Shown piece by piece: positions 42,183 to 59,918 of a stretch of DNA of 64,000 nt. The notes under the pieces were generated by a model. It saw only the letters and a program-made list of their open reading frames with translations, ran no database searches and had not been told where the DNA came from. The first letter of the stretch is position 1. Each line of letters opens with the position of its first letter. The position numbers and the translations under genes were made by a program. The DNA lies in sequence record OR493421.1, one strand, 5' to 3'.

Positions 42183-42219
42183 AATAAAACCTCAATAATG
42201 TGGATTAATATCATGTTGA

Positions 42220-42295: not shown

Positions 42296-44305
42296 ATGAC
42301 GACTCCAACACAAAATGGTATACCCAGTAGCACCGCTATAGATGCTAGGTTTAACGCCGAGAAGTTAGATGAGATCGTTAATTCTGATAATGAAACCTAT
42401 AGTGACCGATTTGGAAATAGTAGGTTTACATTAAAGGGGTTAGCAACCCAGGTACAAGGATTTTTTGATAAAGTGCTTGGATCTGACGGAGCCGACTATA
42501 TCCCGTTAAAACAGGGAGGGAAAGTTGGCGACGCGATTGTTTCGGTTCACGTCGATTCATTTGGGGCGGATCCGTCAGGGCTAACTGACTCCACCCAAGC
42601 GGTAAAGTCCGCCCTGGCTGCAATTTCTACCGTCACCGGTAGCCCGATGAATGGTTCGGTTGATACTACTTACGCCTCTCTAGTTTTCGGAAACGGGAAA
42701 TATGTAGTTGGCGATATCCCGCTATATTCCGGAATTTGGTATAAGGGGCAGGGCGCGTTTGAGACAATACTCATACCTAAAGCTGGATCAGAATTTGTCT
42801 TCACAACCGTGGGTACCAAGCCTTATGAAACCTACAGTATTTCATACAGGTTGTTCAGAACTATTATATCGGATCTTCATATAGGCTGCGGTTATCAGAA
42901 TGTGCTAAGTGGCGTCACTATCCCTACCGGTGTAGGAGGGATAAGGATTTATCATGCGTCTTACGTCACCATTGAAAACGTATATCTGCGTCATTTAGAC
43001 GGGATGGGTTTTGATTTTGGATCTCTGTGGGACTCCGAAACATTTGGGTTAAGGGCGATGTACGTGGGGAACTGCCGTGATTCGTCTAACCCGGCCTGGG
43101 CTTTCAGACTGTGGGCGGCTGACGCGGCAACGGACGGTTCTAACGCGAATAGATTTTGGTCAACTCACATTGAGGGATGTCCCGCGGACATATGCGTCGA
43201 CTTAAGATCCAGACACAATTTCTTTTTCGGCGGGAAAATAGAAAAAATCCGTTACAACGATGCAAATGCTTTCTGTTCTAGTGTTATAAGGGGTGCCGAC
43301 AGCCTTGTTTTTTGCGATTTTGAACTTACTTCAGTAAACGTCATTCACTTTATGTTTGAAATTGTGGGTACGACAACGGTAATCGATACGAGCGCGGACG
43401 ATGTTTCTGATCCAAACTGCGATCATTCTAGAGGCGTCGTGTTCATGAACCCACACATAATAGACAGTAATGCGTTGTCGGGGGACTATTTTAAAACCAA
43501 ATCTGATAGAGGTAGGATTAAGATTATCGGGGGGTACGCCAGGCACGCCAGGTATTTAATAAGTGGATCTGACGTAAAAATTTCTGATATGGATTTGACC
43601 CAATGCGGACCCACCATTGGCCTATTACAGGGGAATACGGTGTTGCAGGGCGTCACCATAGGTAGAAGCCGTGTCCCTACATCCGGGAGCTTCTCGGTAT
43701 TTACAGTTACTGGTAACTCCAACAAAATACGTTTTTGTGAGTTCGGAACCGTTTACGGATCAGCCACTAATAATGGGTCGTGGATAACTGTGAACTCTTC
43801 AACCGAATTGCAAATAAACGATCTTGAGTTTAGCGGTAGTATGCAAAACGGAATCAGCGGTTCTAACGCAACTCAGCAAAGAAAATTCAGAAATGTGAGA
43901 CTTGCTTCCGGCGCTACGTACGGTTCGCTTATTAATGGCGGTTACCCTTACGACGGACTTCCAACCAAAATCATTACTGATACAGGATACGCCGTTTCTA
44001 ACAGAATAACTGTTCCTGTTGACGGGACTGTTGCATCGCCAGCAACAGTCGGAGGAGCTTCGTCTATTCTGGTTAGAGTGGAAAATGCGTCATCTGTGGC
44101 GATCGCCTCAGGTAGAATATTTGGTGATGCGTCATTCGCGACCTTGAAAATAGAATCCGACATCCAGGGTAATTTATCTGTTACTGGAGTGGGGGTTAGT
44201 GGAGATGGTAAAATTTATTTGTCTCAATCCAATGGCGCGCTTTCCATAACTAATAGGACATCCGGTACCATTACAGTGTACATCCTCACCATAAACGCAA
44301 AATAA
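42296..44305 (+). CDS. tailspike/depolymerase 1 (inverted)
   Basis: shared anchor PT..PS..D..FNAEKLD..VNSD..DRFG; VDSFGADPSG..DST beta-helix entry; only plus-strand gene supported. Confidence 0.88.
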   Translation: MTTPTQNGIPSSTAIDARFNAEKLDEIVNSDNETYSDRFGNSRFTLKGLATQVQGFFDKVLGSDGADYIPLKQGGKVGDAIVSVHVDSFGADPSGLTDSTQAVKSALAAISTVTGSPMNGSVDTTYASLVFGNGKYVVGDIPLYSGIWYKGQGAFETILIPKAGSEFVFTTVGTKPYETYSISYRLFRTIISDLHIGCGYQNVLSGVTIPTGVGGIRIYHASYVTIENVYLRHLDGMGFDFGSLWDSETFGLRAMYVGNCRDSSNPAWAFRLWAADAATDGSNANRFWSTHIEGCPADICVDLRSRHNFFFGGKIEKIRYNDANAFCSSVIRGADSLVFCDFELTSVNVIHFMFEIVGTTTVIDTSADDVSDPNCDHSRGVVFMNPHIIDSNALSGDYFKTKSDRGRIKIIGGYARHARYLISGSDVKISDMDLTQCGPTIGLLQGNTVLQGVTIGRSRVPTSGSFSVFTVTGNSNKIRFCEFGTVYGSATNNGSWITVNSSTELQINDLEFSGSMQNGISGSNATQQRKFRNVRLASGATYGSLINGGYPYDGLPTKIITDTGYAVSNRITVPVDGTVASPATVGGASSILVRVENASSVAIASGRIFGDASFATLKIESDIQGNLSVTGVGVSGDGKIYLSQSNGALSITNRTSGTITVYILTINAK

Positions 44306-44363
44306 TAAACGACGCCTTATCAGTAGGGAAATAGTGGGAGGTGTGTATTTTTAACTACTCCCG

Positions 44364-44415
44364 CCCCACCCCAATTTTAACCTGAAGTGAGGAAAGGCAG
44401 ATGACATCTTTTTAA
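44364..44415 (+). pseudogene. relic leader and first codons (MTSF*) of a lost tailspike gene
   Basis: CCCCACC-CCAATTTTAACCTGA...ATGACATC matches the leader of tailspike 51522-53300 (minus strand CCCCACCGCCAATTTTAACCTGA...ATGACATC); SD GAGGAAAGG. Confidence 0.55.
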
Positions 44416-44446
44416 AATTATCGGGATGTTTTTGAGATAGCGTGAT

Positions 44447-44482
44447 TATACTCTCCCTGACTATATAGTCAGGGAGAGTATA
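44447..44482. terminator. bidirectional terminator between convergent genes
   Basis: TATACTCTCCCTGACT-ATAT-AGTCAGGGAGAGTATA. Confidence 0.8.
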
Positions 44483-44492
44483 GCGGCAGCTT

Positions 44493-45290
44493 CTATTTAA
44501 ATGCCAAACTATCGAAGAACATATTCATCATTTCTAATTTCTTTTGATTCATCATTTTAATGAATAAATTTTGTTCTTTCTTAACGAATTGCTCTTCCCA
44601 ACTCCCCAGATTATATTTCTTCTCACCCACTACAATGACTTTTTCGGTTCCATTGATATAACCTACTGCACTTTCTCCATTTAATCCGATAGAGAAATAA
44701 TCGCCGCTAAATTGAGGGGCGTCGATAATAACGGACGAGAATCTTTTATTCGTTATAGTTTGCACCCCGAAGAAAAGTCTGGAGTGTACAACTCGGCAAT
44801 CCCTCAAAGTCGTTCTTCCGGTCAAATCTCTGTTGACGATATAACTGTGATCAATAAAGTTATTGGCCAAATTACAGCCAATAAGATCACTGCACTTAAT
44901 AGCGATACCTTCCCCAATTTCCCCGTTCGACGTAATCGAAACATCCTGGAGTTTCGAGTCAACAATGGTGCACTGAGCTAAATTTGAAATATTGGTGCGA
45001 TGAACCCGGGAGTTATTTAAATGAAGTTTTTTGGAGTAGCTTGTTAAACCGTTTAAGAAGATTACGCCAGTTAATGATGTTTCGTCACTAATATGTATCA
45101 GGTTGGGTCCAGTGAATAGGATCTCAGTTAACCACCCCACTACATTCTCGAATCTCTGAGAAGTCATCTTAGGGTTGTCTAAGACCAGTTTAAGTGAATC
45201 ATCGCCATCAGTGAAATTAATATCCTCTTTTTTTATTACCAGATTAAAGTGTTCAATCAATTCTTCTTTAGTCACTTTCATTTTATTCAC
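44493..45290 (-). CDS. hypothetical protein with beta-helix-like repeats
   Basis: repeating I/V/L-x-N/D-S/C pattern in the central part. Confidence 0.6.
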   Translation of the reverse strand: MNKMKVTKEELIEHFNLVIKKEDINFTDGDDSLKLVLDNPKMTSQRFENVVGWLTEILFTGPNLIHISDETSLTGVIFLNGLTSYSKKLHLNNSRVHRTNISNLAQCTIVDSKLQDVSITSNGEIGEGIAIKCSDLIGCNLANNFIDHSYIVNRDLTGRTTLRDCRVVHSRLFFGVQTITNKRFSSVIIDAPQFSGDYFSIGLNGESAVGYINGTEKVIVVGEKKYNLGSWEEQFVKKEQNLFIKMMNQKKLEMMNMFFDSLAFK

Positions 45291-45389
45291 CTTTATTTTA
45301 CAGTTTAAAATGAGAACGTGTTATTTCAAACCGGTGTTTAAAACAACGTATTCTCGTTTATTACCAATAAAACATTACGGTCGTTAAAA

Positions 45390-45857
45390 TTAACCGAGCT
45401 GCATGGTGTATTCGACGGGTTTAAATTTAAGACTCTTGTAAAGCTTCTGAGCGGCTTTATTAGACCTGTAAACGTTTAACTGTACGATGTATCCATTTGA
45501 TCTTGCCGACACGATAGCAGCGATTAGGTTGCGTTTAGCAAGCCCTTTATGGCGATACTCAGGTAACGTATAAACGTTAAAGATTTTCGCTATTTTGAGA
45601 TGATGTTCTAAAGCGTAAACAACGGATAGAATCGACACTATTTTCTTCCCATCAAAAACGAGGAAGTAGTGTTCGTTTAAACGGTTGTGTTTAAAATCTT
45701 CCAGATTGAACGAATAGGGGTTGATGTCTTTAGCGATACTTTTCTTAGCGAAGTGATTAATGTCAGTCATCGCCAAATTTAACATTGTGATGACTTCTCC
45801 CTCTAAACCCAATCCAATTATTTCTTTTCCGTAGTAATTATCGTACATGAGGTTCAT
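45390..45857 (-). CDS. GNAT N-acetyltransferase
   Basis: NVYTLPEYRHKGLA, LNVYRSNKAAQKLYKSLKF. Confidence 0.9.
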   Translation of the reverse strand: MNLMYDNYYGKEIIGLGLEGEVITMLNLAMTDINHFAKKSIAKDINPYSFNLEDFKHNRLNEHYFLVFDGKKIVSILSVVYALEHHLKIAKIFNVYTLPEYRHKGLAKRNLIAAIVSARSNGYIVQLNVYRSNKAAQKLYKSLKFKPVEYTMQLG

Positions 45858-45905
45858 GATTACAGTCTCTTATGAAAAGTTCATAAATGGCCGTGGCGCG
45901 TTTAA

Positions 45906-45942
45906 AATAACTCCTATTCCCGATAAGGGAATAGGAGTTATT
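45906..45942 (-). terminator. repeated terminator hairpin (variant copy 3, loop reversed)
   Basis: CTCCTATTCCC-GATAA-GGGAATAGGAG, reverse complement of copies 1 and 2 with one compensatory pair change. Confidence 0.8.
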
Positions 45943-45947
45943 AGAAC

Positions 45948-46721
45948 TTACTTATAAAGTTTCAGGGCTTTGGAGCAAATGTCTGACCGCACACTATCAG
46001 CCGCATTGAAACGATAAACCGGGAATCCATTTTCAGGATCTCGTTCGATACGCTCCAGCAGATCTTCCAGACCGGATTTAACTCCTTTAGGAAGATCGCA
46101 CTGGGTAAGGTCGCCGTTGATGATTACCGTAGTGTTCTCACCCATACGAGTGATGAACATTTTCATCTGCATAACTGTAACGTTTTGCGCTTCGTCAAGA
46201 ATCACTACTGAGTCAGAAAAAGTACGACCCCTCATAAAAGCAAAAGGAGCGACTTCGACTTTCTCCACGCCAGGCTTCATGCAATAGTTAAGCATTCCAC
46301 CGCCCAGGCGTTTCAGTAAGATGTCGTAGACCGGCCGGAAGTAAGGCGCGAATTTTTCATTAACATCTCCGGGGAGAAAACCCAGATCTTCATCGGCCTG
46401 TAAGACCGGCCGTGTAACGATGATCTTTTCCACGTCTTTAGCCAGCAGACGTTCTGCGGCGTAACAAGTCGGGAGGAACGTTTTACCGCTACCCGCTTCA
46501 CCAATACCGATGACGACATCGTGGGCGTGTAACCCATCCCAATATTTTTGCTGCATTGGGGTTTTCGGCTCAATCTTACTCCGATCAGCTTTTGCAAGAG
46601 GTAGATTTACTTCACTGAAATTGTTGTCCACCAGTTTCAGTTGGCTACTTTGGGACTTATCTTGACGTCTTGCTTCGCGACGAGCGTCGCGGTTAGCACG
46701 CTTAACACTACGATTATGCAT
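45948..46721 (-). CDS. phoH: PhoH-family ATPase
   Basis: PKT..Q, GEAGSGKT, IVTRP, LGFLPGD, PFAFMRGRTF, ILDEAQN, GDLTQCD. Confidence 0.95.
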   Translation of the reverse strand: MHNRSVKRANRDARREARRQDKSQSSQLKLVDNNFSEVNLPLAKADRSKIEPKTPMQQKYWDGLHAHDVVIGIGEAGSGKTFLPTCYAAERLLAKDVEKIIVTRPVLQADEDLGFLPGDVNEKFAPYFRPVYDILLKRLGGGMLNYCMKPGVEKVEVAPFAFMRGRTFSDSVVILDEAQNVTVMQMKMFITRMGENTTVIINGDLTQCDLPKGVKSGLEDLLERIERDPENGFPVYRFNAADSVRSDICSKALKLYK

Positions 46722-46792
46722 ATAAGTACCTGCTGTGTGTGGGTTAACTCCTTACCTTCATAGCATTAGGGCTGGGTAGAAAATAACTAGAA

Positions 46793-47026
46793 TTATGTCC
46801 CGGAGTAAGTTGTTAAAGCTTTGAACGACACACCCTGATTAACTGTGTTGATGTATTCCGCTACCGCGCCGGCGCCCATCGCATCCATTCGCTGAGTCCT
46901 CTCACCCAAACCAAATGACCCGAATTGAGGGAAACCCCACTTAGTAACGGTTGTAAAATTACAGCCTTGAGTAATGAACCCCATATCGGCAGTGTAATCA
47001 AAAGATCGGACCTTCACATTAACCAA
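46793..47026 (-). CDS. uncertain short ORF / possible tail-protein fragment
   Basis: 77 aa, TTG start, no clear SD; frame open a little further upstream without ATG. Confidence 0.35.
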   Translation of the reverse strand: MVNVKVRSFDYTADMGFITQGCNFTTVTKWGFPQFGSFGLGERTQRMDAMGAGAVAEYINTVNQGVSFKALTTYSGT

Positions 47027-47103
47027 TTTAGCGTACGCTCTGGAGGCAAACTCTACGGTACGTTAGTTAAAAAAATACCCCCAATTCTACTGACTATAAG
47101 GAT

Positions 47104-47385
47104 TTACTGCTGTTCTTCTTCTGCCTGAGTTTCTTCTGAAGCCCGTTCTGCGCGTTTGATATCTTCGATGTCTTTGTTCACCGCCTCGTCTTCTTCTTGC
47201 CGAGCGGTATCTTTCTCCATACCTTCGGCTTTCTCGATACGACCCAACTCGATAGATACACGCTGCAATTCGTTATTAGCGATAATCGATTCGAGCTCGG
47301 CGATGTATCGTTTGGCTTCGGCGCCTTCTAAACGCAGGTGGCAAATTTGAGCTTGAAGTTGAAGAATTTGTTTTTCGGCTGACAT
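47104..47385 (-). CDS. acidic coiled-coil protein, possible tailspike assembly chaperone
   Basis: heptad N-half, acidic tail; last gene after tailspike run; AAGGA SD. Confidence 0.6.
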   Translation of the reverse strand: MSAEKQILQLQAQICHLRLEGAEAKRYIAELESIIANNELQRVSIELGRIEKAEGMEKDTARQEEDEAVNKDIEDIKRAERASEETQAEEEQQ

Positions 47386-47430
47386 GATATTTCCTTAGAT
47401 GGGTTTATGGTCCATATATTGGTTAAATCG

Positions 47431-48948
47431 TTAAGGAACAATTATCCAGGTCGATCCATCGTACCAAACCTCTACTTTAGTTGGGGTGGTGACAGTTAAA
47501 GGGTACGTAGCGTAACCACTTACGTTGACTTCCTGGGCGTTGGCGGTGATATAGTATGTTCCAGCCCTAAGTATCTTCAATTCGTAAAAATGACCTGAAG
47601 ACATATTACTTATAGCCGGCATTGTCAGAGTTATCCCGGCTGCATTTATCAGATAACAAGGAATGAGCGCATTCAGCGTTGTATTCGTCGTAAGCACACT
47701 GTACTTAGTCATATTGCGCAGACGTCTACCGTATCCATCGTAAATCATCGTCGAGTTAACATACGACATATCTGTCATATCGGAAGATTTGCTGAACACC
47801 ATCGAATAAGTGGGCATTCCAGAAAATCTTATTCCGACTGGCGCAGACCCGGTCGATACGTAGTTATTATACGTGGCGCCGGACGCATAGAAGTTCATTC
47901 TGTTATTAGTTGAACGGACACCGTACAACCATGTTTTAGCTGAAGTGCTCGCAGGGCGAACCAGTACGCCAGCCACACCATCATAGAGGCTTTGTTGGAG
48001 CAGCGGAATATCGATACCGTTTAGCGAAGCTCCAGACTTATTGATCACCGCCCCAAATTCGCATATTACGGCATTATCGGCGGCAGAGTTGCTGTTAATG
48101 ATAGTGTTGGCGTTGATAGCCCAAACTTTATTAATCAGGTTGACGTTGAACCCCACGCCCGAAGTCGGTGTTAGAGTGGCCCCATCAGCTGTCGCCCATT
48201 CATCAACTGTCACCACACCAGTGGTTTTGTTTATACTGGTAATCAACCCCCAACATTTAGTGGGGTGGAGTGTCTGAATGACGTCACCAACTAGGGCGTT
48301 GGTCAGGAAAGAAGAATACACCGATGGGCTGACCGTAACAGTCGTGGCGGTATATGACGCAGTATCAACTGTTTCCCAGTCTTCCAGTGCTGGAGCTAAG
48401 GCGTCGGCAAATAATGTTACGCCATCATTCAACCCATATGCAGCTACGCCCCTGGCGTTCTGCGCACCCGTAACCTGAGCATTGAAGACTCCAGTATCTC
48501 CTGATGAAGCTCGGCCACCTCGTAAACTCAATGCGGTCGCGTGCCTGCGAATACTACGGAATTTCCTACCTATGGTGATCGAACCATTCAAAAGAAGATC
48601 GGTATCGCGAAGAGCGCCCTGCTCTGTAAAAATAGCAAGGTCGTTAGTCGAAGAATACCCCAGATAAGGACGCGGAAGACCCGAGTCACTCATTGTCCTC
48701 ATACGGGAAAGAACATCTCCCACATTAGAGGTTCTATATCCGACATTCTCCGCCCCGTTTTCAGTGGAAAACGACGTCATCCAATTAGAAACGTTTTGTC
48801 TAATCCCGTTTAACGTCGTTCTGCTGATCCCAAGACGGTCTGTAAAAGACGTGTTGTTAGAGTTGATAAACTCGTCAAATTTTTCTGCGTTGAATAATCG
48901 GTCTTGAACCGAGTTACTCGGTATATTGTTATTAGTTGGGGTAGTCAT
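47431..48948 (-). CDS. tail fibre/spike 2
   Basis: shared anchor; beta-rich body without typical pectate-lyase entry motif; ends EVWYDGSTWII. Confidence 0.85.
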   Translation of the reverse strand: MTTPTNNNIPSNSVQDRLFNAEKFDEFINSNNTSFTDRLGISRTTLNGIRQNVSNWMTSFSTENGAENVGYRTSNVGDVLSRMRTMSDSGLPRPYLGYSSTNDLAIFTEQGALRDTDLLLNGSITIGRKFRSIRRHATALSLRGGRASSGDTGVFNAQVTGAQNARGVAAYGLNDGVTLFADALAPALEDWETVDTASYTATTVTVSPSVYSSFLTNALVGDVIQTLHPTKCWGLITSINKTTGVVTVDEWATADGATLTPTSGVGFNVNLINKVWAINANTIINSNSAADNAVICEFGAVINKSGASLNGIDIPLLQQSLYDGVAGVLVRPASTSAKTWLYGVRSTNNRMNFYASGATYNNYVSTGSAPVGIRFSGMPTYSMVFSKSSDMTDMSYVNSTMIYDGYGRRLRNMTKYSVLTTNTTLNALIPCYLINAAGITLTMPAISNMSSGHFYELKILRAGTYYITANAQEVNVSGYATYPLTVTTPTKVEVWYDGSTWIIVP

Positions 48949-48966
48949 AATTCACCTTGAATGAAC

Positions 48967-48988
48967 GAGAGGGAGTTAACCCCCTCTC
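48967..48988 (-). terminator. hairpin between tailspike genes
   Basis: GAGAGGG.GTTAAC.CCCTCTC. Confidence 0.65.
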
Positions 48989-49001
48989 TTAAGCTGATAG
49001 G

Positions 49002-51457: not shown

Positions 51458-51467
51458 AGCATAAAAT
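51458..51467 (-). promoter_or_regulatory. ATTTTATGCT element upstream of tailspike 3
   Basis: identical 10-mer at 59992-60001. Confidence 0.45.
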
Positions 51468-51480
51468 CGAAGAAGAGTAA

Positions 51481-51512
51481 TAGCTGCTGTTCCCCGGTGG
51501 GAACAGCAGCTA
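51481..51512 (-). terminator. terminator hairpin
   Basis: TAGCTGCTGTTCCC-CGGT-GGGAACAGCAGCTA. Confidence 0.8.
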
Positions 51513-51521
51513 TTAGTTAAC

Positions 51522-53300: not shown

Positions 53301-53321
53301 TATCTAATTCCCATCAGGTTA

Positions 53322-53365
53322 AAATTGGCGGTGGGGATGTTATCCCCATTGTCCACCGCCAATTT
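53322..53365 (-). terminator. long hairpin between tailspike genes
   Basis: AAATTGGCGGTGG...CCACCGCCAATTT with inner GGGGAT-GTT-ATCCCC. Confidence 0.75.
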
Positions 53366-53382
53366 GACTATTTATGAGGTTT

Positions 53383-55542
53383 TTAGCTCACTACGGCAGC
53401 GCTAATTATTACACCGTCAGTATCGGATGTGGGTGTTCCGACTTTAGCGCGTTTATTCCCTGTCGAGTCATACCACTCATGAACATCGCCATTAACGATA
53501 TGTTGTCGTGAATATGATTTACTCAGCCCACTATTATGTCCGGTTGACAACGGCATGTCGTTGTTATAAATATTCAGGTTGCCTATTATAAATTTAGTTT
53601 GAGACCCGGCAATAAATGTACCCGGCCTAAATCTAACAATAAGCTGTCCCGTATCATTAGGTATAAAGGGCAATACGCATTTTTGCCATCTGGGGTTAGT
53701 GTCAAGCAGAATATTTCTCCGGTATAGTAAAACGGAACCGTCGGAGTTAAATATTTCAGCTAACACACTTTTGGTTGGCGTGGAAGACGACATCTTAACT
53801 TCAAAGTCGATCCAGGTCTTTTTACCCGCGATTGGATTTATCAGGGCGTATACCCTAGCAGTGGCGTCGGCTGCCGTTACTTCCATTGCTTCATTTAAAC
53901 CCCCATATGAGTTATTCATGGGGGTTTTAGTTGCAGACACTGCAGTGAGGTCGGCTGTTATACCAGAGTAAAGGTTATTATAATCTACCTTCTGGATCCC
54001 TATGTTTAGGGACGAGGCCTGAGGGTGTCCTGATAAATAAGACAGCGGATCGATCGTTTTAAAGACGTCGTTTAAATTGGACAGCGGGTTGATATCACTA
54101 CCTTCCTGTAAAGCCAAGCAATGAGATGCGTCAAACACGTTCGTTCTGCTAAGATTACCTATCGCCGTCTGACCTATACTCGAAGCGAACTCTATAATGT
54201 ATTTAGGCATTCCGCTATCGTACAAATCAGAAAAATACAGATTCCCCACATTAGGCGTGTATGACTTGATCATCGGAGCTACAACAGAACCGTTAGTGTT
54301 GATGACATTATTGGCCAGGAATCTCACCCCAGACAGGTATCCGATGGAAGTTGTTTCCACGTGGTGTCTGTCATTATTAAGGTTATCAGTTAAACCTACG
54401 CCCGAATTAGCTAAAAGAATATGCGTGTCGCCTTCAACAAGGAACTCCTGTCCGAACTTGTTCGCCAAGAACACCAAACCGCGTCCTGCGTTGTTGGTCG
54501 TTATGCCCGGTTCAATCCAAACATCGTGAGAGTTCCCGGTTCTATTGCCTGTTCTATACCAATCGTTTCTTGAGATATTGAAAGGGGTCGCCGGACCATT
54601 TGTCGTAGTCCCATTTGTACCCAAAGCCAATTTAATCCCATAAAGGTTGTCGGCAAAAGTACAGTTGTCGATCACCCCGCCGGCGCTATAACCAGAGATA
54701 CAAACACCTATCGTATCCTTAGTGACATCACCGTAAAAGAATGAATCCCTGACCCTAACGTACGGCATGTCGATGGAATTATTGCCGATCGCACACTCGG
54801 TGTATCTCGACATAACTAACCTTTCAAAAAGATGCATGCCGGAAGCATTTCGAGAAGTCGACTTATATCTTACTGCCCCCTTACCACCAGAAATAGTCAT
54901 ATCACTCAGACCACTTCTCACCGGATTATTTGTAAAGTCAAATAAATATCCTGATGACAGAATGATCTTAGTCGATAACATGCTTTCACCCCTAACGTTA
55001 AACACGAAAGAGTTAGAGGAAGTTATGTCCAGCCCAGGACCGGTGTAAATAAAACAACCGTTCTCTATAGTCAGCAGCGGTCCTTTCTGCAACATAAAGG
55101 GTAGTTCGTTAGCACCTGCAGCAGCTCGTTTATACGTGACATCCATTAAACACGCCCACCAATCGTTGAAAGCCTCGGTGTCGTCGGCGCTACCGTCACC
55201 TTTAGCCCCGAAGTTCTTTCTCAGCCCAGCGGTGCCGTCTAAAAGGAGATCGCCTACTTTCCTCGTCATTACCGCCGGGGCCCTGGTAGAAGGAACTGAG
55301 AGACGATCTTCGACATTACTGCCGTCAGCAGTACCTATCTTGCTCGCCCCGGTGACGCCCGATAACCCACTTAACCACGTTTGGATGAAATTATAAATCC
55401 CACTTAGTGTAAATCTCTTTTTACCGAATCTATCAGTGTATTCAAGATCATCGCTATTAACGACTTCGTCGAGTTTTTCCCCGTTAAAAATCTGATCTAA
55501 AATATTCCCGCTAGGAATAGGATTCTTAGTTGGCTGTGTCAT
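53383..55542 (-). CDS. tailspike/depolymerase 5
   Basis: anchor nearly identical to tailspike 4; NFGAKGDGSADDTEAF pectate-lyase-3 entry; CBM-like C-terminal sandwich. Confidence 0.9.
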   Translation of the reverse strand: MTQPTKNPIPSGNILDQIFNGEKLDEVVNSDDLEYTDRFGKKRFTLSGIYNFIQTWLSGLSGVTGASKIGTADGSNVEDRLSVPSTRAPAVMTRKVGDLLLDGTAGLRKNFGAKGDGSADDTEAFNDWWACLMDVTYKRAAAGANELPFMLQKGPLLTIENGCFIYTGPGLDITSSNSFVFNVRGESMLSTKIILSSGYLFDFTNNPVRSGLSDMTISGGKGAVRYKSTSRNASGMHLFERLVMSRYTECAIGNNSIDMPYVRVRDSFFYGDVTKDTIGVCISGYSAGGVIDNCTFADNLYGIKLALGTNGTTTNGPATPFNISRNDWYRTGNRTGNSHDVWIEPGITTNNAGRGLVFLANKFGQEFLVEGDTHILLANSGVGLTDNLNNDRHHVETTSIGYLSGVRFLANNVINTNGSVVAPMIKSYTPNVGNLYFSDLYDSGMPKYIIEFASSIGQTAIGNLSRTNVFDASHCLALQEGSDINPLSNLNDVFKTIDPLSYLSGHPQASSLNIGIQKVDYNNLYSGITADLTAVSATKTPMNNSYGGLNEAMEVTAADATARVYALINPIAGKKTWIDFEVKMSSSTPTKSVLAEIFNSDGSVLLYRRNILLDTNPRWQKCVLPFIPNDTGQLIVRFRPGTFIAGSQTKFIIGNLNIYNNDMPLSTGHNSGLSKSYSRQHIVNGDVHEWYDSTGNKRAKVGTPTSDTDGVIISAAVVS

Positions 55543-55555
55543 TAAAAACTCCTGT

Positions 55556-55579
55556 TCCCCCTGAGGTTAGTCAGGGGGA
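55556..55579 (-). terminator. hairpin between tailspike genes
   Basis: TCCCCCTGA-GGTTAG-TCAGGGGGA. Confidence 0.75.
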
Positions 55580-55585
55580 CGATTG

Positions 55586-55780
55586 TTATCTGGTAAAGGC
55601 TAATGGGGTGCTGGGTCCTTCAGTTAGCCAGTAAACTGGAAGTTTGATGCTTATTGTTCCAGTGATCCCACTGAGTATCAGAGAGGGCCGTACAACAATT
55701 ACATTGCTCGGGTCGGAATAGGTGTGTTGTTTGGTGACTCGCACCCCAACACACTTAGACGTCGTTAACGACGTTCTCAT
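55586..55780 (-). CDS. uncertain short ORF downstream of tailspike 6
   Basis: 64 aa beta-rich, weak SD; may be a hitchhiking fragment. Confidence 0.3.
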   Translation of the reverse strand: MRTSLTTSKCVGVRVTKQHTYSDPSNVIVVRPSLILSGITGTISIKLPVYWLTEGPSTPLAFTR

Positions 55781-55853
55781 CTACGATAGCCTTTACGGAC
55801 CATAGTCGATGTGAATAGTTGCATCCGCCATTATCATTTCCCGAATGTACACG

Positions 55854-57725
55854 CTAACCAGTAATCAATTCAGCATAAGTATCCTGCAATGTAGCTAAAT
55901 TCATTGAATACCTAACCGTCTGTCCTTTACTGACAGTAAAGTTTCCTGAAACTTGCCCTGTCATTTTCGCAAAATACGCGGCGGAATGCCCGTCCACTGT
56001 AACAATGAACGAACTGTTCGTTGCATCATTGAGTTGCGCTACAAAGTACACTTGTTTTTGACATCTTGTGGTCCACACGGTATCTGTGGTCGATACACCC
56101 CAACCAATGCGCAGTCGTCTACCGTTGCCTGTTGTCAACGTACCAGCAACATTGACCTCAGATCCTGGCGTGTACAATTTTCCAATGGCGTCCTGGTGTG
56201 GTATGTAAACAGGCGCTCCACTATAAGTCCCCCCAAAATTAATATTTTCGACCGTGATTCTGGAAGAACTATTGTTACCGCCGTACACGGCATATGTTGG
56301 GCTGGTCTGATTATCTGTGTTCCAGATTATCTGACCATCTTTTATGGTTAGCGTCGCGGGTATGCCATCGTCAATCGCAAAACATGCTTTCGAACTAAAC
56401 CCAAGCGATGTATTACCTTTTGTCACAGCCACATTATGCGCAATCAACCGCACCGATACAGTAGAGACACCATTAAGGCCAGTATACGAACCAACTTCAG
56501 AGCACAGTCTCGCAAATTGGTTTACTGAAACCCCCTCTGCGTTTTCAATCGTCACATCAGCATAATTTCCGAGTTTAAACACGCAGTTGGGTCCGTATCC
56601 CCTGGCTCTTGAGTAGTGGACTATCGAGTCCACAATTTCTACAGAGTACGCATCTTTCGTTTGCTGAGATGCCGCCGGGTCAGTCTGAGATGCTATAAAC
56701 AGAGCAGAAATAGTGTGGAATCCAGTACAGCCATAGATATAGCTTTCACTAGGCCCCATCAGTTTTTTCGTAATAGCTACTGAGGTGCATTTCTGGAATT
56801 TAAACTTAGCGGGCTGGAAGTTCTCAATATTAATATCATGAGAATCAAGGAAAAAGGCACCTGCCGTGCAGTTACCCTCTAGGATTGAATTAATGAAACC
56901 AAAGCCGTTTGTTCCTGCAAAACAAACCGAACCGCCACAGTTATATGCAACTACTTGGGAGGCTGCGTTTATACTTTGAACGCCAACTTTCTGAGTCACG
57001 CCATCAACAACTACGGTACGACCAAGAGACCCAACAAGCCACCCATTGTAATTCCGACCATTAACAATGAAGGTAGGACCGATAACGTCCTCTTCGAACC
57101 TTACAGCAAAGGATGATGCCTCTCGGTTGTCTGGGAACGCACCTGCGTCTGTTTTATCACCCAAAATATGGATAGATATGAAGGGGTCATAGCACCTGAT
57201 GAACTTAAACTGAGCTTCACCTTTCATTTGATAGTGACCAACAACGCCGGCAATGTTACCACCATAGTTCCAGTAGTGATACGCGGACTCAACCGTTGAC
57301 TGAAATACATATTGGCGAGTTATCGGAACCCAATCCTTGGTGTCATTTACAATAATCTTTGAGTTATACCCACTGGCGTCAAACGAATCATTGTATGCTG
57401 CTAAAAATGCGTTCTCACCACGCAATCCCCTTGCGTAGTAGTTTGATAGCATAATGCATTTATCTTTATTTATAAGCGCGCCTAATGCCGCTTCCACTGT
57501 AATACCACTGGACGTCCCTACGTTAGACGCCCCGGAACTTGATCCTAGGCTGCTCATCCAATTCTGGATGACGTTATAAAGTCCTGAAAAAGTAAATCGC
57601 TTCTTACCGAAGCGGTCAGTATATTGGAGGTCGTCGCTATTAACGACCTGGTCTATTTTTTCAGCATTAAAGAGCTGGTCGTTCTTAGCTGAACTAGGAA
57701 CGGCGTTTTGTGTTGGGAGTGTCAT
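55854..57725 (-). CDS. tailspike/depolymerase 6 (start corrected to MTLPTQ)
   Basis: GAGGAATAGCA precedes ATG at 57725; anchor; beta-helix body. Confidence 0.88.
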   Translation of the reverse strand: MTLPTQNAVPSSAKNDQLFNAEKIDQVVNSDDLQYTDRFGKKRFTFSGLYNVIQNWMSSLGSSSGASNVGTSSGITVEAALGALINKDKCIMLSNYYARGLRGENAFLAAYNDSFDASGYNSKIIVNDTKDWVPITRQYVFQSTVESAYHYWNYGGNIAGVVGHYQMKGEAQFKFIRCYDPFISIHILGDKTDAGAFPDNREASSFAVRFEEDVIGPTFIVNGRNYNGWLVGSLGRTVVVDGVTQKVGVQSINAASQVVAYNCGGSVCFAGTNGFGFINSILEGNCTAGAFFLDSHDINIENFQPAKFKFQKCTSVAITKKLMGPSESYIYGCTGFHTISALFIASQTDPAASQQTKDAYSVEIVDSIVHYSRARGYGPNCVFKLGNYADVTIENAEGVSVNQFARLCSEVGSYTGLNGVSTVSVRLIAHNVAVTKGNTSLGFSSKACFAIDDGIPATLTIKDGQIIWNTDNQTSPTYAVYGGNNSSSRITVENINFGGTYSGAPVYIPHQDAIGKLYTPGSEVNVAGTLTTGNGRRLRIGWGVSTTDTVWTTRCQKQVYFVAQLNDATNSSFIVTVDGHSAAYFAKMTGQVSGNFTVSKGQTVRYSMNLATLQDTYAELITG

Positions 57726-57767
57726 TGCTATTCCTCGAGTCAGGAAGGTTGAAATATCGTTAGGCAT

Positions 57768-57801
57768 AAAATCCAACCGCCTATAAGGGCGGTTGGATTT
57801 T
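57768..57801 (-). terminator. terminator hairpin overlapping an ATTTTATGC element (57764-57772)
   Basis: AAAATCCAACCGCC-TATAAG-GGCGGTTGGATTTT. Confidence 0.8.
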
Positions 57802-57941
57802 AATTAACCAATGAACAAACATTTTCCGGTAAATTCAACACCCCGGTACCCGGGTAGATGATTCCTTTCCATCTTTGCTACTAGGCATAACGACAGTGGA
57901 CTAGTTAAAGACACCCTGTCGGTTACTCAAATCACAACGAG

Positions 57942-59918
57942 TTATTGTTCAAAAACACAAACCGGGCCCATAAAAATGTCCCCGGTCATTTGATAATGCC
58001 TGAAACCTACATTGGCTTTAACCGCGCCATTTGGAACGGAGATAAAACCACTGCAAATAACTGCGTTCGTAACTGTGCTGGATTGAGTATTCAGGTTAAC
58101 CCCAACGTTAACGTGACTAATCTCGCTACCTCTTATGTCATACCAAGTGACGCCGAAATAACCGTTACCAGATGTCGCAACTAAGTTATTCCAGAGCAAC
58201 TTAGTTGAAAGATATAATATCCTTCCTGGATGGACCTGAATGTCCTGCCCCACTAATGTTGTTGTTCCGCCTCCAGTTGATGTACCCGTGATTTTGACAG
58301 AATTTCCCAATGTCGGATTGTTGGCAAACGTCACAGTTGGTTTTACTGGCTCACCAGAAGATACTGAATAATCGACAGTCCATCCGGTAAGATCGCCCGT
58401 AGAAAAATTATAGTTTCTCATTGGGGAAACGGTATTTCCTAAATCGAGATAATCTACTCCACCTTGGATGTCGAAGAAAATGTTCTTAATGGAAACCTGG
58501 GGTCGGCCACTGACAGAGTTCACTACCATGGATGACTGCATTTTACCGTATTTTCCCCAACTCCCCCCGTCCGCACTCAATCGACAAAAACCATTGGTAA
58601 GGAAGAAAGCCGGTTTGCCGGTATTAGTACCTACCTGAGCGACATCATTACCTCCGTCGATATTGACGGAGAAAAGATCGACTTGTGGTTTTCTTTTACC
58701 ACTGGTATAAGTGATAACGCCGTAGGGCATTAGAGAATTATTTTCAAAATGACAACCTAAGAAACTTAAGGACCCTGAGTTTAATTTGAAAACAGTATCT
58801 GTGTAATCAAAAGATGTTTTATAGAAGAAGGCGTCAATGAAATGACCGTCTGGGGTCGAATACACTGCCGAAGTGGAGTTATCGGAATTTTTCCCGTTAA
58901 AGATGACACCGCCATTAAAAGATATATTTTCTCCGGCGTCATTTAAACAGTTGAAGTGCACACCATAGCGCCAGAACTTCCCAAGATGCACATTGTTAAA
59001 TTGCAAAAGATAGACCGACTTATCTCCAATGTATAAACAGTCTCTAAATCCTTCTATCCAAAGATCATTAAAGACGACCCCCGATACCTGAGTGGAGTTC
59101 CCTGGATAAATCCCGACCCCATCAAGAGTTCCAGAAACTATCAATGGGGGAGAGCTCCACTCATCTCCACCGTACGGACCCTGCAAATTTAATTTTATTT
59201 TACTACCAGCGTTGTAAGTTTTATTAATATCACCCATAACTCTGACTGCGAAACCTGAGTTTAACTTGGTTGGATCGACAATAAGTCTGGACAATCCCAT
59301 GTTCAACTCGCCTTCCCCGGCGTAAACAACGAGCTGCTTAGAAAACAAATATCTCGCGTTAGAATTTTCAGAAGTGATGGTGTGACCCATCAATTGAAGA
59401 TTTAAAGCCTTTTGAAGAGAATCGGAATCATCATTAATTTTATTCCCAAAACAACCCGCTTGTTCAAAGGTATATTCCCTTTTTAAGTTCCTCTTCCATC
59501 TCGCCCCCTTGGGAGTAACGAAAATTAGAAACCCGTCATCGTCTGAGGTTTTGTCCAGGGGATCGTAATAAAGCTCACCCCCTCCAACCGGGGGAGTTGA
59601 CGAAGCCCCCCATCCAGAGTGATAAGATTTAAGAATAATTCGCTGATAATCTACCGATGGCTCCACGGATCTCAATGTAGTGACGTCGATACAAGTCCCT
59701 ATAAATTTAGACCCGTCAGGGAGTCCAACGTTATTTTGAAAATCACTTCCTATCTGATTAATCAGATTCTGAAGTCCGGCGGTAGTTAATCTTTGTTTAC
59801 CGAATCGGTCTACGTAATAATTAGCATCAGAGTTAACTATCTGATCTAATTTCTCAAAGTTAAATCTCGAATCCAACAAGTTATTGCTGGGAATCGGTAA
59901 TTGGGTAGGTGTGGTCAT
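57942..59918 (-). CDS. tailspike/depolymerase 7
   Basis: anchor; TSP1/gp66-like N domain (LRSVEP..QRIILKSY..GGG..DDG); beta-helix; CBM-like C-term (NYNFSTGDLTGW). Confidence 0.9.
   Translation of the reverse strand: MTTPTQLPIPSNNLLDSRFNFEKLDQIVNSDANYYVDRFGKQRLTTAGLQNLINQIGSDFQNNVGLPDGSKFIGTCIDVTTLRSVEPSVDYQRIILKSYHSGWGASSTPPVGGGELYYDPLDKTSDDDGFLIFVTPKGARWKRNLKREYTFEQAGCFGNKINDDSDSLQKALNLQLMGHTITSENSNARYLFSKQLVVYAGEGELNMGLSRLIVDPTKLNSGFAVRVMGDINKTYNAGSKIKLNLQGPYGGDEWSSPPLIVSGTLDGVGIYPGNSTQVSGVVFNDLWIEGFRDCLYIGDKSVYLLQFNNVHLGKFWRYGVHFNCLNDAGENISFNGGVIFNGKNSDNSTSAVYSTPDGHFIDAFFYKTSFDYTDTVFKLNSGSLSFLGCHFENNSLMPYGVITYTSGKRKPQVDLFSVNIDGGNDVAQVGTNTGKPAFFLTNGFCRLSADGGSWGKYGKMQSSMVVNSVSGRPQVSIKNIFFDIQGGVDYLDLGNTVSPMRNYNFSTGDLTGWTVDYSVSSGEPVKPTVTFANNPTLGNSVKITGTSTGGGTTTLVGQDIQVHPGRILYLSTKLLWNNLVATSGNGYFGVTWYDIRGSEISHVNVGVNLNTQSSTVTNAVICSGFISVPNGAVKANVGFRHYQMTGDIFMGPVCVFEQ

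What the first reader, a model, noticed from the sequence alone, without database searches (positions are those of the whole stretch)
42296..59918. Seven receptor-binding proteins sharing one interchangeable N-terminal anchor
Seen: all seven start with PT-x3-PS-x4-D-x2-FN-x-E(K/Q)-x-D-x3-NS-x5-DR(F/L)G-x2-R-x-T-x2-G, then diverge into unrelated beta-helix, CBM-like or knob-like bodies. Established: well-studied branched multi-tailspike phages use distinct N-termini and adaptor tailspikes, and from recall this anchor resembles that of enterobacterial prophage and siphovirus tailspikes. Inference: an unbranched plug-in design in which seven trimers dock on equivalent sites, possibly giving heterogeneous virions and letting the phage recruit depolymerases from the prophage pool. 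The host is probably an encapsulated enterobacterium such as Klebsiella.
Basis: partly seen in the sequence, partly recalled or inferred. Interest (0 to 1): 0.75.

Follow-up and report, generated by a model that had tools for sequence, protein, structure and literature searches.

The report
Seven tailspikes with slot-specific shared anchors
A giant Klebsiella phage carries seven capsule-degrading tailspike genes that all begin with the same small docking domain known from a Shigella siphophage, but the first ~40 residues of that domain come in six conserved "address" versions kept in a fixed gene order, which suggests six distinct docking sites rather than seven interchangeable plugs.

Summary
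The window is the last 64 kb of Klebsiella phage YC1, a Miami-like chimallivirus. It encodes exactly seven proteins that start with one ~56-residue domain and continue into unrelated bodies (7 motif hits, 0 in shuffles).

The domain is the N-terminal anchor of the Shigella siphophage Sf11 tailspike gp13 (PDB 9OCC, E 1e-22; predicted fold rmsd 0.7-0.9 Å). In Sf11 a trimer of this anchor clamps one helix of the distal tail protein.

The seven anchors are not interchangeable copies:
- Residues 1 to ~40 include the equivalents of the Sf11 contact residues and fall into six discrete classes.
- The classes keep one gene order (F-E-D-C-B ... A) in all 11 related arrays examined.
- Variable positions are 85% identical within a class and 38% between classes.
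- They are under purifying selection although synonymous sites are nearly saturated.

Bodies do move between classes. In the cleanest case the junction lies at the invariant hairpin near residue 40.

Best reading: an address-plus-cargo system with six different docking sites, each loadable with exchangeable depolymerase bodies. The docking partner in YC1 was not found. I rate this a new variant of a known kind.

The parts
42296..44305 (+). RBP #1, 669 aa, address class A. Anchor at 42296-42463. Lies alone on the + strand, convergent with the rest of the array.
   Evidence: Anchor HMM E 1e-32; class A. Pfam PF12708 pectate-lyase-like at residues 84-230. Body 49% identical to a 42-kb Klebsiella podophage protein. 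Backbone-level DNA homology with relatives runs only ~120-150 nt into the gene.
44493..47385 (-). Conserved non-RBP block that separates slot A from slots B-F: a 265-aa protein (44493-45290), a GNAT acetyltransferase (45390-45857), PhoH (45948-46721) and a 93-aa ORF (47104-47385).
   Evidence: Annotation and PHROG/Pfam scans. The PhoH, acetyltransferase and 262-265-aa genes lie between slots B and A in every array where that stretch is available; PhoH follows slot B on the shorter contigs L018 and L023, and L024 ends before this block.
47431..48948 (-). RBP #2, 505 aa, address class B. Anchor at 48781-48948.
   Evidence: 100% identical to the phiKp_32 orthologue. Body 41% identical to a podophage tail fibre and 28-30% to N4-like phage tailspikes. 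Fold not determined, because the alignment was too shallow.
49002..51395 (-). RBP #3, 797 aa, GTG start, address class C. Anchor at 51225-51392, then a conserved neck module (residues ~45-170), then the body.
   Evidence: The class C anchor is 100% identical (56 aa) in six phages although the bodies differ. The neck matches the N-terminal region of solved depolymerases and tailspikes (7vyv, 7lzj, 6tgf, CBA120 TSP2). Body 57-59% identical to jumbo, N4-like and Ackermannviridae-like Klebsiella phage proteins, one of them annotated 'depolymerase'.
51522..53300 (-). RBP #4, 592 aa, address class D. Anchor at 53133-53300.
   Evidence: Body 43% identical to a tailspike of the 41-kb podophages MT09/TH49/TH50.
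53383..55542 (-). RBP #5, 719 aa, address class D in its first half; the second half of the anchor is class-E-like. Anchor at 55375-55542.
   Evidence: Body 57% identical to the gene adjacent to the #4-like gene in MT09/TH49/TH50.
55854..57725 (-). RBP #6, 623 aa, address class E. Anchor at 57558-57725. Body is a beta-helix plus a C-terminal jelly-roll domain.
   Evidence: AF2 model of the body with pLDDT ~90. Best Foldseek matches are Klebsiella capsule depolymerases (9qrm, 8iq9, 6tku, 7vyv), and the C-terminus matches CBM35/TNF-like folds. The same body (91% identical) sits on a different 208-aa N-terminus in a metagenome protein, and a 40% relative carries a T7-tail-fibre N-terminus.
57942..59918 (-). 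RBP #7, 658 aa, address class F. Anchor at 59751-59918, followed by a neck module like that of #3.
   Evidence: Body 45-48% identical to 300-kb jumbo phage proteins and to a 48-kb siphophage 'tailspike depolymerase'. Backbone DNA homology enters only the first ~125-145 nt.
51478..51515 (-). Strong terminator-like hairpin (17-bp stem) between #4 and #3.
   Evidence: A consensus match only, not evidence of function.
60031..60064 (.). Palindromic 15-bp-stem hairpin between the upstream 117-aa gene and #7.

Best explanation
The seven genes encode trimeric, virion-borne receptor-binding tailspikes, most or all of them capsule depolymerases, of the chimallivirus-type jumbo phage YC1. Each is built as address + joint + cargo. 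Residues 1 to ~31 (an extended arm plus helix 1) form a slot-specific address that exists in six versions, A to F. Residues ~34-48 form an invariant beta-hairpin (D37-R38-x-G40-x-x-R43-x-T45-x-x-G48) that is the common structural joint; it is also where the one cleanly mapped body swap begins and where backbone DNA homology into #1 and #7 ends. Helix 2, the neck and the body are the exchangeable cargo. By homology with Sf11 gp13 (shown), three copies of the anchor in a trimer clamp one helix offered by a tail or baseplate protein (inferred for YC1). Because the six addresses differ at the positions that touch that helix in Sf11, and are kept apart by selection in a fixed gene order, each class most likely docks on its own site (inferred). 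That would give a defined bouquet of up to six kinds of sockets per baseplate sector. Two genes of one class, such as #4 and #5, would then share or compete for one kind of socket. New specificities arise by recombination that replaces everything downstream of the address, so a body can be moved from slot to slot or imported from unrelated Klebsiella phages.
For: Identity of the anchor:
- The anchor profile hits only Sf11 gp13 residues 2-59 in the PDB, at E 9.5e-23.
- The AF2 model of residues 1-120 has pLDDT >90 for residues 10-80. It shows an arm (1-13), helix 1 (14-29), a hairpin (34-44) and helix 2 (46-60).
- That model superposes on 9occ chains G, I, J, K and L with rmsd 0.7-0.9 Å and target-normalised TM 0.91-0.94, and has no other significant match.
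- The Sf11 paper (PMC12724387) shows residues 4-59 of three gp13 chains bundling with one helix of the distal tail protein gp17, through gp13 Arg16 and Lys19.

Six classes:
- The 41 anchors of six phages cluster by locus position, not by phage.
- At variable positions 1-31 identity is 85% within a class and 38% between classes. The nearest neighbour in another phage is of the same class in 41 of 41 cases. For positions 32-56 the figures are 64% against 27%, and 37 of 41.
- Class-specific columns are 3, 6, 7, 12-15, 17, 18, 21, 24 and 26-28. They include the equivalents of Sf11 Arg16 (position 15) and Lys19 (position 18). Position 18 is R, L, K, I, L, R in classes A-F.
- Five further metagenome or assembly arrays obey the same order F..E..D..C..B, with PhoH after B where the contig reaches it and A on the other strand beyond it in L020 and L022; classes can be missing or doubled.
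- Of 160 anchor-bearing library proteins, 75 fall into the six classes, mostly at 86-100% identity on 21 variable positions. The other 85 are of the siphophage type, with R/K15, L17 and K18.

Selection:
- Within classes, codons 2-31 have pS 0.54-0.83 and pN 0.06-0.12. Class C has pS 0.09 and pN 0.

Exchange:
- Bodies are shared across classes in 7 pairs, against 33 same-class pairs.
- Miami #4 (class F) and P0004 (class D) are 60-70% identical over residues 1-40 and 100% from residue 41 on.
- Backbone DNA homology ends 120-150 nt inside #1 and #7.

Bodies:
- See parts.
Against: - No docking partner was identified. YC1 has no detectable homologue of Sf11 gp17 or of its helix and no protein with repeated docking helices.
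- All structural inference rests on monomer predictions and on one solved complex from a siphophage.
- Class-to-position linkage is partly expected from synteny by descent.
- The pS and pN values come from 30 codons near saturation and are rough.
- The class-specific residues could serve trimer specificity rather than socket specificity.
- Two genes of one class coexist in several genomes, so classes are not strictly one gene per socket.
- There are no data on expression, virion incorporation or enzymatic activity for any of the seven.
- The fold of #2 is undetermined.
Confidence: 0.58

Rival explanations
1. One reading: all seven trimers dock on equivalent sites through a functionally interchangeable anchor, which gives stochastic, heterogeneous virions.
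For: All seven keep the same 15-18 invariant residues and the same predicted fold. Several genomes carry two genes with nearly the same address: YC1 #4 and #5, KPN8, L018 and L023. Bodies move between classes.
Against: There are six discrete address classes with 38% between-class identity at variable positions. Their gene order is fixed in 11 arrays. pN/pS is 0.07-0.16 on the address despite near-saturated pS. The equivalents of the Sf11 contact residues differ between classes.
Confidence: 0.15
2. The classes exist to keep co-expressed tailspikes from forming mixed trimers (orthogonal trimerisation), not to address different sockets; docking sites may still be equivalent.
For: Helix 1 of three chains packs in a bundle in Sf11, so class-specific residues could sit at chain-chain contacts. 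Seven similar N-termini made in one cell would risk mis-pairing.
Against: Genomes tolerate two genes of the same class. Trimerisation of such proteins is normally driven by the beta-helix and C-terminal parts (established knowledge of P22-type tailspikes). The two positions known to touch the partner helix in Sf11 are among the class-specific ones. This model does not explain the fixed order or the fact that the same six classes recur in every genome.
Confidence: 0.12
3. Hierarchical or branched assembly: only one or a few anchors bind the baseplate, and the others bind helices offered by other tailspikes or fibres, for example the conserved neck of class C or the four large tail-fibre paralogues. 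Classes would then mark levels of a branch.
For: Published tables assign Miami a 'branched multi-fiber arrangement' by analogy (PMC13709898). An anchorless 559-aa protein always follows a 545-aa anchored one in Miami and L024, and the pair moved together between slots F and D. Class C has an unusually conserved anchor plus neck. YC1 has four large fibre paralogues with their own shared N-terminus.
Against: No T4 gp10-like branching domain was detected by Pfam, PHROG or PDB sequence searches in the seven proteins. All seven use the anchor type that in Sf11 binds a tail protein directly. This rival overlaps with the best explanation, since both posit distinct partners.
Confidence: 0.12
4. The class-to-position pattern is neutral history: an old tandem duplication, with the 5' ends of the genes simply lying outside the usual recombination tract. 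The addresses would have no functional difference.
For: Backbone DNA homology runs into the first 120-150 nt of #1, #7 and #3. The arrays are related by descent.
Against: For classes A, B, D, E and F the address codons are far more diverged at synonymous sites (pS 0.54-0.83) than the ~90-95% identical backbone, yet they stay nearly constant in protein sequence. Dozens of distinct metagenome proteins keep 86-100% identical addresses.
Confidence: 0.03

Closest known systems
Shigella siphophage Sf11 tailspike gp13 docked on distal tail protein gp17 (PDB 9OCC; J Virol 2025, PMC12724387)
   Same: Homologous N-terminal anchor: E 1e-22, 52-55% identity, predicted rmsd 0.7-0.9 Å. It sits at the extreme N-terminus of a beta-helix tailspike. 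The presumed mode is a trimer clamping one partner helix.
   Different: Sf11 and its ~46-kb relatives have one such tailspike and one highly conserved docking helix (98% column conservation among 120 gp17 homologues). YC1 is a 252-kb contractile-tailed chimallivirus with seven anchors in six address classes and no gp17 homologue.
Branched tailspike complexes of Ackermannviridae (CBA120 TSP1-4) and G7C gp63.1/gp66
   Same: Several different depolymerase tailspikes sit on one virion. The neck module of #3 and #7 resembles the region that precedes the beta-helix in CBA120 TSP2.
   Different: Those systems use different N-termini and T4 gp10-like branching domains, with a single attachment to the baseplate (Latka 2019, PMC6872550). 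Here every protein has the same anchor fold and no gp10-like domain was detected.
Klebsiella jumbo phages phiK64-1/RaK2 (Alcyoneusvirus) and phiKp24, with 9-14 RBPs
   Same: Large arrays of capsule depolymerases that broaden capsule-type coverage. Some bodies are related: Miami gp092/093 resemble RaK2 gp526/525.
   Different: Those phages are modelled as hyperbranched, with one anchor, several short conserved peptides and gp10-like domains. They belong to a different phage lineage and no Sf11-type anchor array has been described for them.
Side tailspikes of siphophages: Sf11-like ~46-kb phages and Klebsiella Drexlerviridae
   Same: Tailspikes that are unrelated except for the extreme N-terminus that attaches them to the virion; in Klebsiella Drexlerviridae host-specificity changes are attributed to swapping of the receptor-binding part (PMC13709898). 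Most of the 242 phage records with the YC1-type anchor are ~46-kb siphophages with one copy each; membership of the Drexlerviridae N-termini in this anchor family was not tested here.
   Different: One slot per genome there. In the siphophage-type anchors the contact positions are almost uniform (R/K15, L17, K18) rather than split into classes.
Adaptor systems of K1-5/SP6 podophages
   Same: Two different tailspikes are mounted on distinct sites of one adaptor through short, specific N-terminal peptides, which is the idea of an address.
   Different: Those use 7-11-residue peptides and a gp10-like adaptor, two sites only, and are not homologous to this anchor.

Membership tests
Sf11 gp13-type tailspike N-terminal anchor | Sequence homology to gp13 residues ~4-59 | tested here: met
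   Profile E 9.5e-23. Single-protein searches gave E 6e-12, 9e-9 and 1e-9 for #7, #1 and #3; #2 alone gave no hit at E 0.01.
Sf11 gp13-type tailspike N-terminal anchor | Same fold: arm, helix, hairpin, helix | tested here: met
   The AF2 model superposes on 9occ chains with rmsd 0.7-0.9 Å and TM 0.91-0.94. This is a prediction, not a solved structure.
Sf11 gp13-type tailspike N-terminal anchor | Located at the extreme N-terminus of a tailspike or depolymerase body | tested here: met
   All seven start at residue 1-2. Bodies are described under.
Sf11 gp13-type tailspike N-terminal anchor | Partner is a gp17-like distal tail protein with an acidic docking helix | tested here: not met
   phmmer and two HMMs (full gp17 and its helix region) find nothing in the YC1 proteome. 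The partner must be a different protein.
Sf11 gp13-type tailspike N-terminal anchor | The trimer forms a four-helix bundle with one partner helix on the virion | not testable with these tools
   Only monomer prediction was available, and there is no virion structure.
Branched T4 gp10-like RBP complexes (CBA120, G7C, KP32 group A) | A gp10-like branching domain in at least one RBP | tested here: inconclusive
   No such family appears in the Pfam, PHROG or PDB sequence hits. No profile-profile search against gp10 was possible.
Branched T4 gp10-like RBP complexes (CBA120, G7C, KP32 group A) | Secondary RBPs carry short conserved peptides or distinct N-termini instead of the primary anchor | tested here: not met
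   All seven carry the same full anchor. Only relatives have one anchorless extra protein.
Phage capsule depolymerase tailspikes (right-handed beta-helix) | Beta-helix body similar to characterised Klebsiella depolymerases | tested here: met
   #6: model and Foldseek. #1: PF12708. #3 and #7: homologues annotated as depolymerase. #2, #4 and #5 rest on homology to phage tail fibres and spikes only.
Phage capsule depolymerase tailspikes (right-handed beta-helix) | Polysaccharide-degrading activity and capsule-type specificity | not testable with these tools
   No close (>60%) characterised homologue was found for any body.
Miami-like jumbo phages (Miamivirus, Chimalliviridae) | Genome-wide similarity to phage Miami, plus chimallivirus hallmarks | tested here: met
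   87-95% nucleotide identity in conserved parts. A multisubunit RNAP beta-like protein and a very large (~2,270-aa) protein annotated 'endolysin', which from memory resembles the phiKZ gp181-type tail lysin. Miami is listed as Chimalliviridae, Miamivirus.

The most novel reading that the evidence does not exclude
The baseplate of Miami-like chimalliviruses carries six mutually orthogonal helix sockets. A ~30-40-residue N-terminal address on each tailspike decides which socket it occupies. If so, gene order, address class and position on the virion form a natural docking code, and any depolymerase body can be re-addressed by one recombination at an invariant hairpin. This would be a set of six orthogonal, homologous protein-docking pairs evolved from the single Sf11-type pair.
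Probability: 0.4. Interest if true: 0.8.

Novelty: new variant of a known kind. Interest (0 to 1): 0.62.

Why it matters
How phages with many receptor-binding proteins place each one on the particle is known in detail for only a few branched systems. This case shows a different logic. One small anchor, solved in 2025 in a siphophage, has been multiplied in a nucleus-forming-type jumbo phage lineage into six conserved address versions. Each heads dozens of different depolymerase bodies in public data.

If the addresses map to sockets, the composition and geometry of the tailspike bouquet could be read from the genome sequence alone. It would also explain how these phages turn over capsule specificities, by swaps at a defined joint. 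The result corrects the published default assumption of a CBA120-like branched arrangement for phage Miami. It also gives annotators a simple rule for recognising and classifying receptor-binding proteins in this group, where most are currently labelled 'hypothetical protein'.

Tried and rejected
1. Docking partner by homology. Sf11 gp17 was compared with the window and with the whole YC1 proteome by phmmer. HMMs of 120 gp17 homologues, full length and helix region only, were also used. None gave a hit.
2. A platform protein with repeated helices. An all-against-all BLAST of YC1 ORFs found no internal repeats. It found only the RBP anchors and four large tail-fibre paralogues. Those gave no informative PDB match, apart from a weak pectin-lyase-like segment in one.
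3. The seven small genes just upstream of the array (60068-63075) as adaptors. Rejected: they have no family hits, and by eye some look membrane-spanning and two have C-termini that might be helix-turn-helix, so they look like accessory genes.
4. A shared promoter or upstream motif for the seven genes. None was found in an alignment of the upstream 100 nt. Sigma-70-like and terminator-like counts are at chance level.
5. Prophage distribution through genome contigs. The alignment was too diverse (error). The scan with close relatives found nothing. A degenerate DNA pattern gave two hits that are not anchors. That collection holds one genome per species, so this is a weak test. The E. coli genome set then gave 7 of 5,426 genomes.
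6. The word-based protein search with the anchor region found only 19 close relatives.
7. A fold for #2 was not attempted, because only one body homologue was available.
8. Base composition of anchors against bodies showed no clear signal of import.
9. A presence/absence comparison of the whole Miami genome, which lacks classes D and E, against YC1 was begun and dropped after one fetch as too costly for a speculative test.

Slip: one search handed three locus-derived sequences (Sf11, the E. coli prophage and the Aeromonas phage) to structure prediction, which its rule forbids. I rebuilt the alignment without them (A7) and sent those sequences to no other remote tool.

Full report
**What the window is.** The window is 100% identical to the last 64 kb of Klebsiella phage YC1 (OR493421.1, 252,505 bp, host K. 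pneumoniae ATCC 700603; window position = record position minus 188,505). Its relatives are Klebsiella phages Miami (genus Miamivirus), KPN8 and phiKp_32, Raoultella phage VB_ZK_P1, and a record labelled Stenotrophomonas phage BUCTxx100. They share 87-95% nucleotide identity in conserved stretches. A 2026 survey lists Miami under Chimalliviridae with 6 predicted RBPs and a 'branched multi-fiber arrangement' assigned by analogy. I found no paper that analyses the N-termini of these proteins.

**The observation.**
- Seven ORFs share an N-terminal domain of about 56 residues with 18 invariant columns, then diverge: 42296-44305 on the + strand, and 47431-48948, 49002-51395, 51522-53300, 53383-55542, 55854-57725 and 57942-59918 on the - strand.
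- An HMM of the anchor finds exactly these seven in the whole genome.
- The sixth gene most likely starts at the ATG at 57725, not at the upstream TTG of the mechanical ORF list. This agrees with the GenBank CDS.
- None of the seven looks broken. Their bodies align over 94-100% of their length with their nearest relatives.

**What the anchor is.**
- A profile of the seven N-termini hits a single solved protein: chain G of PDB 9OCC, the tailspike gp13 of Shigella siphophage Sf11, residues 2-59, at E 9.5e-23.
- With a 90-sequence alignment, AlphaFold2 predicts for residues 1-120 of gene #6 an extended arm (1-13), helix 1 (14-29), a beta-hairpin (34-44) and helix 2 (46-60). pLDDT is above 90 for residues 10-80.
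- Foldseek places this model on the five modelled gp13 chains of 9OCC with rmsd 0.7-0.9 Å and target-normalised TM 0.91-0.94. Nothing else matches significantly.
- The Sf11 paper shows that residues 4-59 of the three chains of a gp13 trimer form a helical bundle with one helix of the distal tail protein gp17. Salt bridges run from gp17 Glu129, Glu136, Glu147 and Glu152 to gp13 Arg16 and Lys19. Six trimers sit on the gp17 hexamer.
- The docking mode in YC1 is inferred from this homology. It is not shown.

**Distribution of the anchor.**
- tblastn of one anchor against 50,697 phage records finds 242 records. Most are ~46-kb siphophages of Salmonella, Klebsiella, Escherichia and Shigella with one copy each.
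- There are seven copies each in YC1 and phiKp_32, and one copy in ~235-kb Aeromonas jumbo phages.
- Sf11 anchor DNA finds 7 of 5,426 complete E. coli genomes.
- One of these hits is an Sf11-like siphovirus prophage next to dacD and sbmC. It carries a tape measure protein, a 165-aa distal tail protein 67% identical to gp17 residues 1-149, gp16 and gp14 homologues, and a tailspike with the anchor.

**The anchors are not copies of one plug.**
- I collected the arrays of the five relatives and found 4 (Miami), 7, 7, 7 and 9 (KPN8) anchor-bearing genes.
- The 41 anchors cluster by position in the locus, not by phage. They form six classes at 65% identity or more, which I call A to F.
- Within YC1 the anchors are only 41-71% identical to each other. 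The same slot in other phages is 73-100% identical.
- The class C anchor is identical in all six phages although the bodies range from 628 to 851 aa.
- The class signal sits in the first half. At the 21 variable positions among residues 1-31, identity is 85% within classes and 38% between, and the nearest neighbour in another phage is of the same class in 41 of 41 cases.
- For residues 32-56 the figures are 64% against 27%, and 37 of 41. There are mosaics: YC1 #5 has a class D first half and a class-E-like second half.
- Class-specific columns are 3, 6, 7, 12-15, 17, 18, 21, 24 and 26-28, that is, the arm and helix 1.
- They include the equivalents of Sf11 Arg16 (position 15) and Lys19 (position 18). 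Position 18 is R, L, K, I, L, R in classes A to F.

**Independent arrays and library proteins.**
- Five further arrays from metagenome or assembly contigs obey the same order:
  - L018: F, F, E, D, C, B.
  - L020: F, D, C, B, then A.
  - L022: E, E, D, C, B, then A.
  - L023: F, F, E, D, C, B, B.
  - L024: F, E, E, D, an anchorless gene, C, B, B.
- PhoH follows slot B wherever the contig reaches that far (L018, L020, L022, L023); L020 and L022 also show the acetyltransferase, the 262-264-aa gene and A on the other strand.
- In total, 72 anchors in 11 arrays are colinear. Classes can be absent or doubled but are never permuted.
- An exhaustive HMMER search seeded with #6 returned 324 cluster representatives.
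- Of 160 library proteins with the anchor, 75 fall into the six classes, mostly at 86-100% identity on the 21 variable positions and with very different lengths and bodies.
- The other 85 are of the siphophage type, with R/K at position 15, L at 17 and mostly K at 18.

**Selection versus history.**
- Within classes A, B, D, E and F the address codons (2-31) have pS 0.54-0.83 but pN 0.06-0.12, a ratio of 0.07-0.16.
- This synonymous divergence is far greater than in the 90-95% identical backbone around them.
- The addresses are therefore old, have been exchanged among diverged phages, and are held constant in protein sequence.
- Class C is the exception (pS 0.09, pN 0) and behaves as part of the backbone together with its neck.
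- These estimates rest on 30 codons near saturation and are rough.

**Where exchange happens.**
- Backbone-level DNA homology with relatives runs only 120-150 nt into #1 and #7, and about 410 nt into #3.
- Across the wider set, bodies at 35% identity or more over 250 aa or more are shared mostly within a class (33 pairs) but also across classes (7 pairs).
- The cleanest case is Miami #4 (class F) against P0004 (class D). They are 60-70% identical over residues 1-40 and 100% identical from residue 41 onward.
- The junction thus lies at the invariant hairpin D37-R38-x-G40.
- In L024, P0004 is followed by the same anchorless 559-aa gene that follows Miami #4. A two-gene unit therefore moved between slots D and F with only the address changed.
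- The body of YC1 #6 is 91% identical to a metagenome protein with a different 208-aa N-terminus, and 40% identical to one with a T7 tail-fibre N-terminal domain.

**The bodies.**
- #1 has a pectate-lyase-like Pfam hit.
- #3 and #7 carry a neck module (residues ~45-170) that matches the region ahead of the beta-helix in solved depolymerases and tailspikes (7vyv, 7lzj, 6tgf, CBA120 TSP2).
- The AF2 model of #6 (body pLDDT about 90) is a beta-helix with a C-terminal jelly roll. Its best Foldseek matches are Klebsiella capsule depolymerases (KP32gp38, K2-2 TSP, 6TKU, Depo32), and CBM35/TNF-like folds for the C-terminus.
- Nearest body relatives by tblastn:

| Gene | Nearest body relatives |
|---|---|
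| #1 | 49%, a 42-kb podophage |
| #2 | 100% phiKp_32; 41% a podophage |
| #3 | 57-59%, 299-kb jumbo, N4-like and Ackermannviridae-like phages |
| #4 and #5 | 43% and 57%, two adjacent genes of the 41-kb podophages MT09/TH49/TH50 |
| #6 | 28%, one 265-kb phage |
| #7 | 45-48%, 300-kb jumbo phages and a 48-kb siphophage 'tailspike depolymerase' |

- The bodies therefore come from the common pool of Klebsiella phage depolymerases. None is close to a characterised enzyme, so capsule types cannot be assigned.
'Knob-like' was not tested.

**What is missing.**
- The docking partner in YC1 is unknown.
- There is no gp17 homologue and no match to its helix. That helix is 98% conserved among 120 siphophage homologues.
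- No protein has repeated docking helices.
- The small genes upstream of the array look like accessory genes, not adaptors.
- In the structural module on the other side of the record junction (record 17094-30715), YC1 has four large tail-fibre-like paralogues that share their own N-terminal domain. One has a weak pectin-lyase-like segment. They are candidates for a platform, but nothing links them to the anchors.

**Interpretation.**
- Shown: seven Sf11-type anchors; six discrete, selected, position-linked address classes; exchange of cargo across classes, with the one cleanly mapped junction at the invariant hairpin; depolymerase-like bodies.
- Inferred: each class docks on its own socket, and genes of the same class share a socket type.
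- Rivals:
  - Classes that serve trimer orthogonality.
  - A branched hierarchy in which some anchors bind other fibres.
  - Neutral history.
- The first and last rivals fit the class data poorly. The second and third cannot be excluded without a virion structure.

**Novelty.** The anchor and its docking mode (2025), modular swapping of tailspike bodies, and multi-depolymerase jumbo phages are all known. What appears new is the multiplication of this anchor into a fixed-order set of six address classes in a chimallivirus lineage, with a defined exchange joint. I rate it a new variant of a known kind.

Noticed in passing
window 41907-42182 (-): The 91-aa protein next to RBP #1 matches Pfam PF11195, Tad2-like (Thoeris anti-defence 2), at E 6e-14. 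The same gene sits at the same place in contigs L020 and L022.
   Followed up: partly
L024 450-917 (NCBI assembly GCA_008916925.1 contig SKEH01000004.1): A 155-aa gene a few kb upstream of the RBP array is flagged PF23474 (Acb1, anti-CBASS). By synteny the YC1 counterpart would lie at the start of the record (about 849-1316), outside the window. The RBP array therefore seems to sit in an accessory, counter-defence-rich region far from the tail genes.
   Followed up: no
L002 22933-26253 (Miami gp092/gp093); L024 12380-15700: An anchorless 559-aa protein directly follows a 545-aa anchored RBP; Miami's record notes cite RaK2 gp526 and gp525 as their relatives. The pair occurs in slot F in Miami and in slot D in L024, with only the first ~40 residues of the anchored partner changed. 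This suggests a piggy-back second-order attachment.
   Followed up: partly
YC1 record 17094-30715 (L009; outside the window): Four large (923-1205 aa) paralogous 'minor tail/tail fibre' proteins share their own N-terminal domain (phrog_2163 type). One has a weak pectin-lyase-like segment (residues 444-591). This is a second, core set of fibres with a different anchor.
   Followed up: partly
L003 10180-12452 (phiKp_32) and L006 8454-8810 (VB_ZK_P1): Relatives carry degraded array members. In phiKp_32 the class D gene is a 259-aa anchored ORF followed by a separate 445-aa anchorless ORF (one break, kind not determined). VB_ZK_P1 has a 118-aa class B remnant beside a full class B gene.
   Followed up: partly
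L007 (OR529409.1): The record named Stenotrophomonas phage BUCTxx100 is ~89-93% identical in DNA to these Klebsiella phages and has a full seven-gene array of the same classes. The host label deserves a check.
   Followed up: no
window 51522-55542 (-) compared with MT446417.1 34145-37523: The bodies of #4 and #5 (both class D) are related, at 43% and 57%, to two adjacent tailspike genes of the 41-kb podophages MT09, TH49 and TH50, in the opposite order. TH49 and TH50 are labelled Escherichia viruses.
   Followed up: no
YC1 record 85426-88972 and 124202-127600 (L010, L011; outside the window): Three separate CDS are annotated 'terminase large subunit, intein-containing'. One of them, of 1132 aa, lies far from the other two. 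Not examined.
   Followed up: no
window 61012-61398 and 61691-62065 (-): Two small upstream proteins (128 and 124 aa) end in similar C-termini that by eye could be helix-turn-helix. The 117-aa and 93-aa neighbours look by eye to have hydrophobic, possibly membrane-spanning segments. None has a family match.
   Followed up: partly
window 42000-60000: The RBP region has somewhat higher G+C (0.445-0.469 per 2-kb window) than its flanks (0.40-0.42). The anchors themselves are AT-rich (0.35-0.47).
   Followed up: partly
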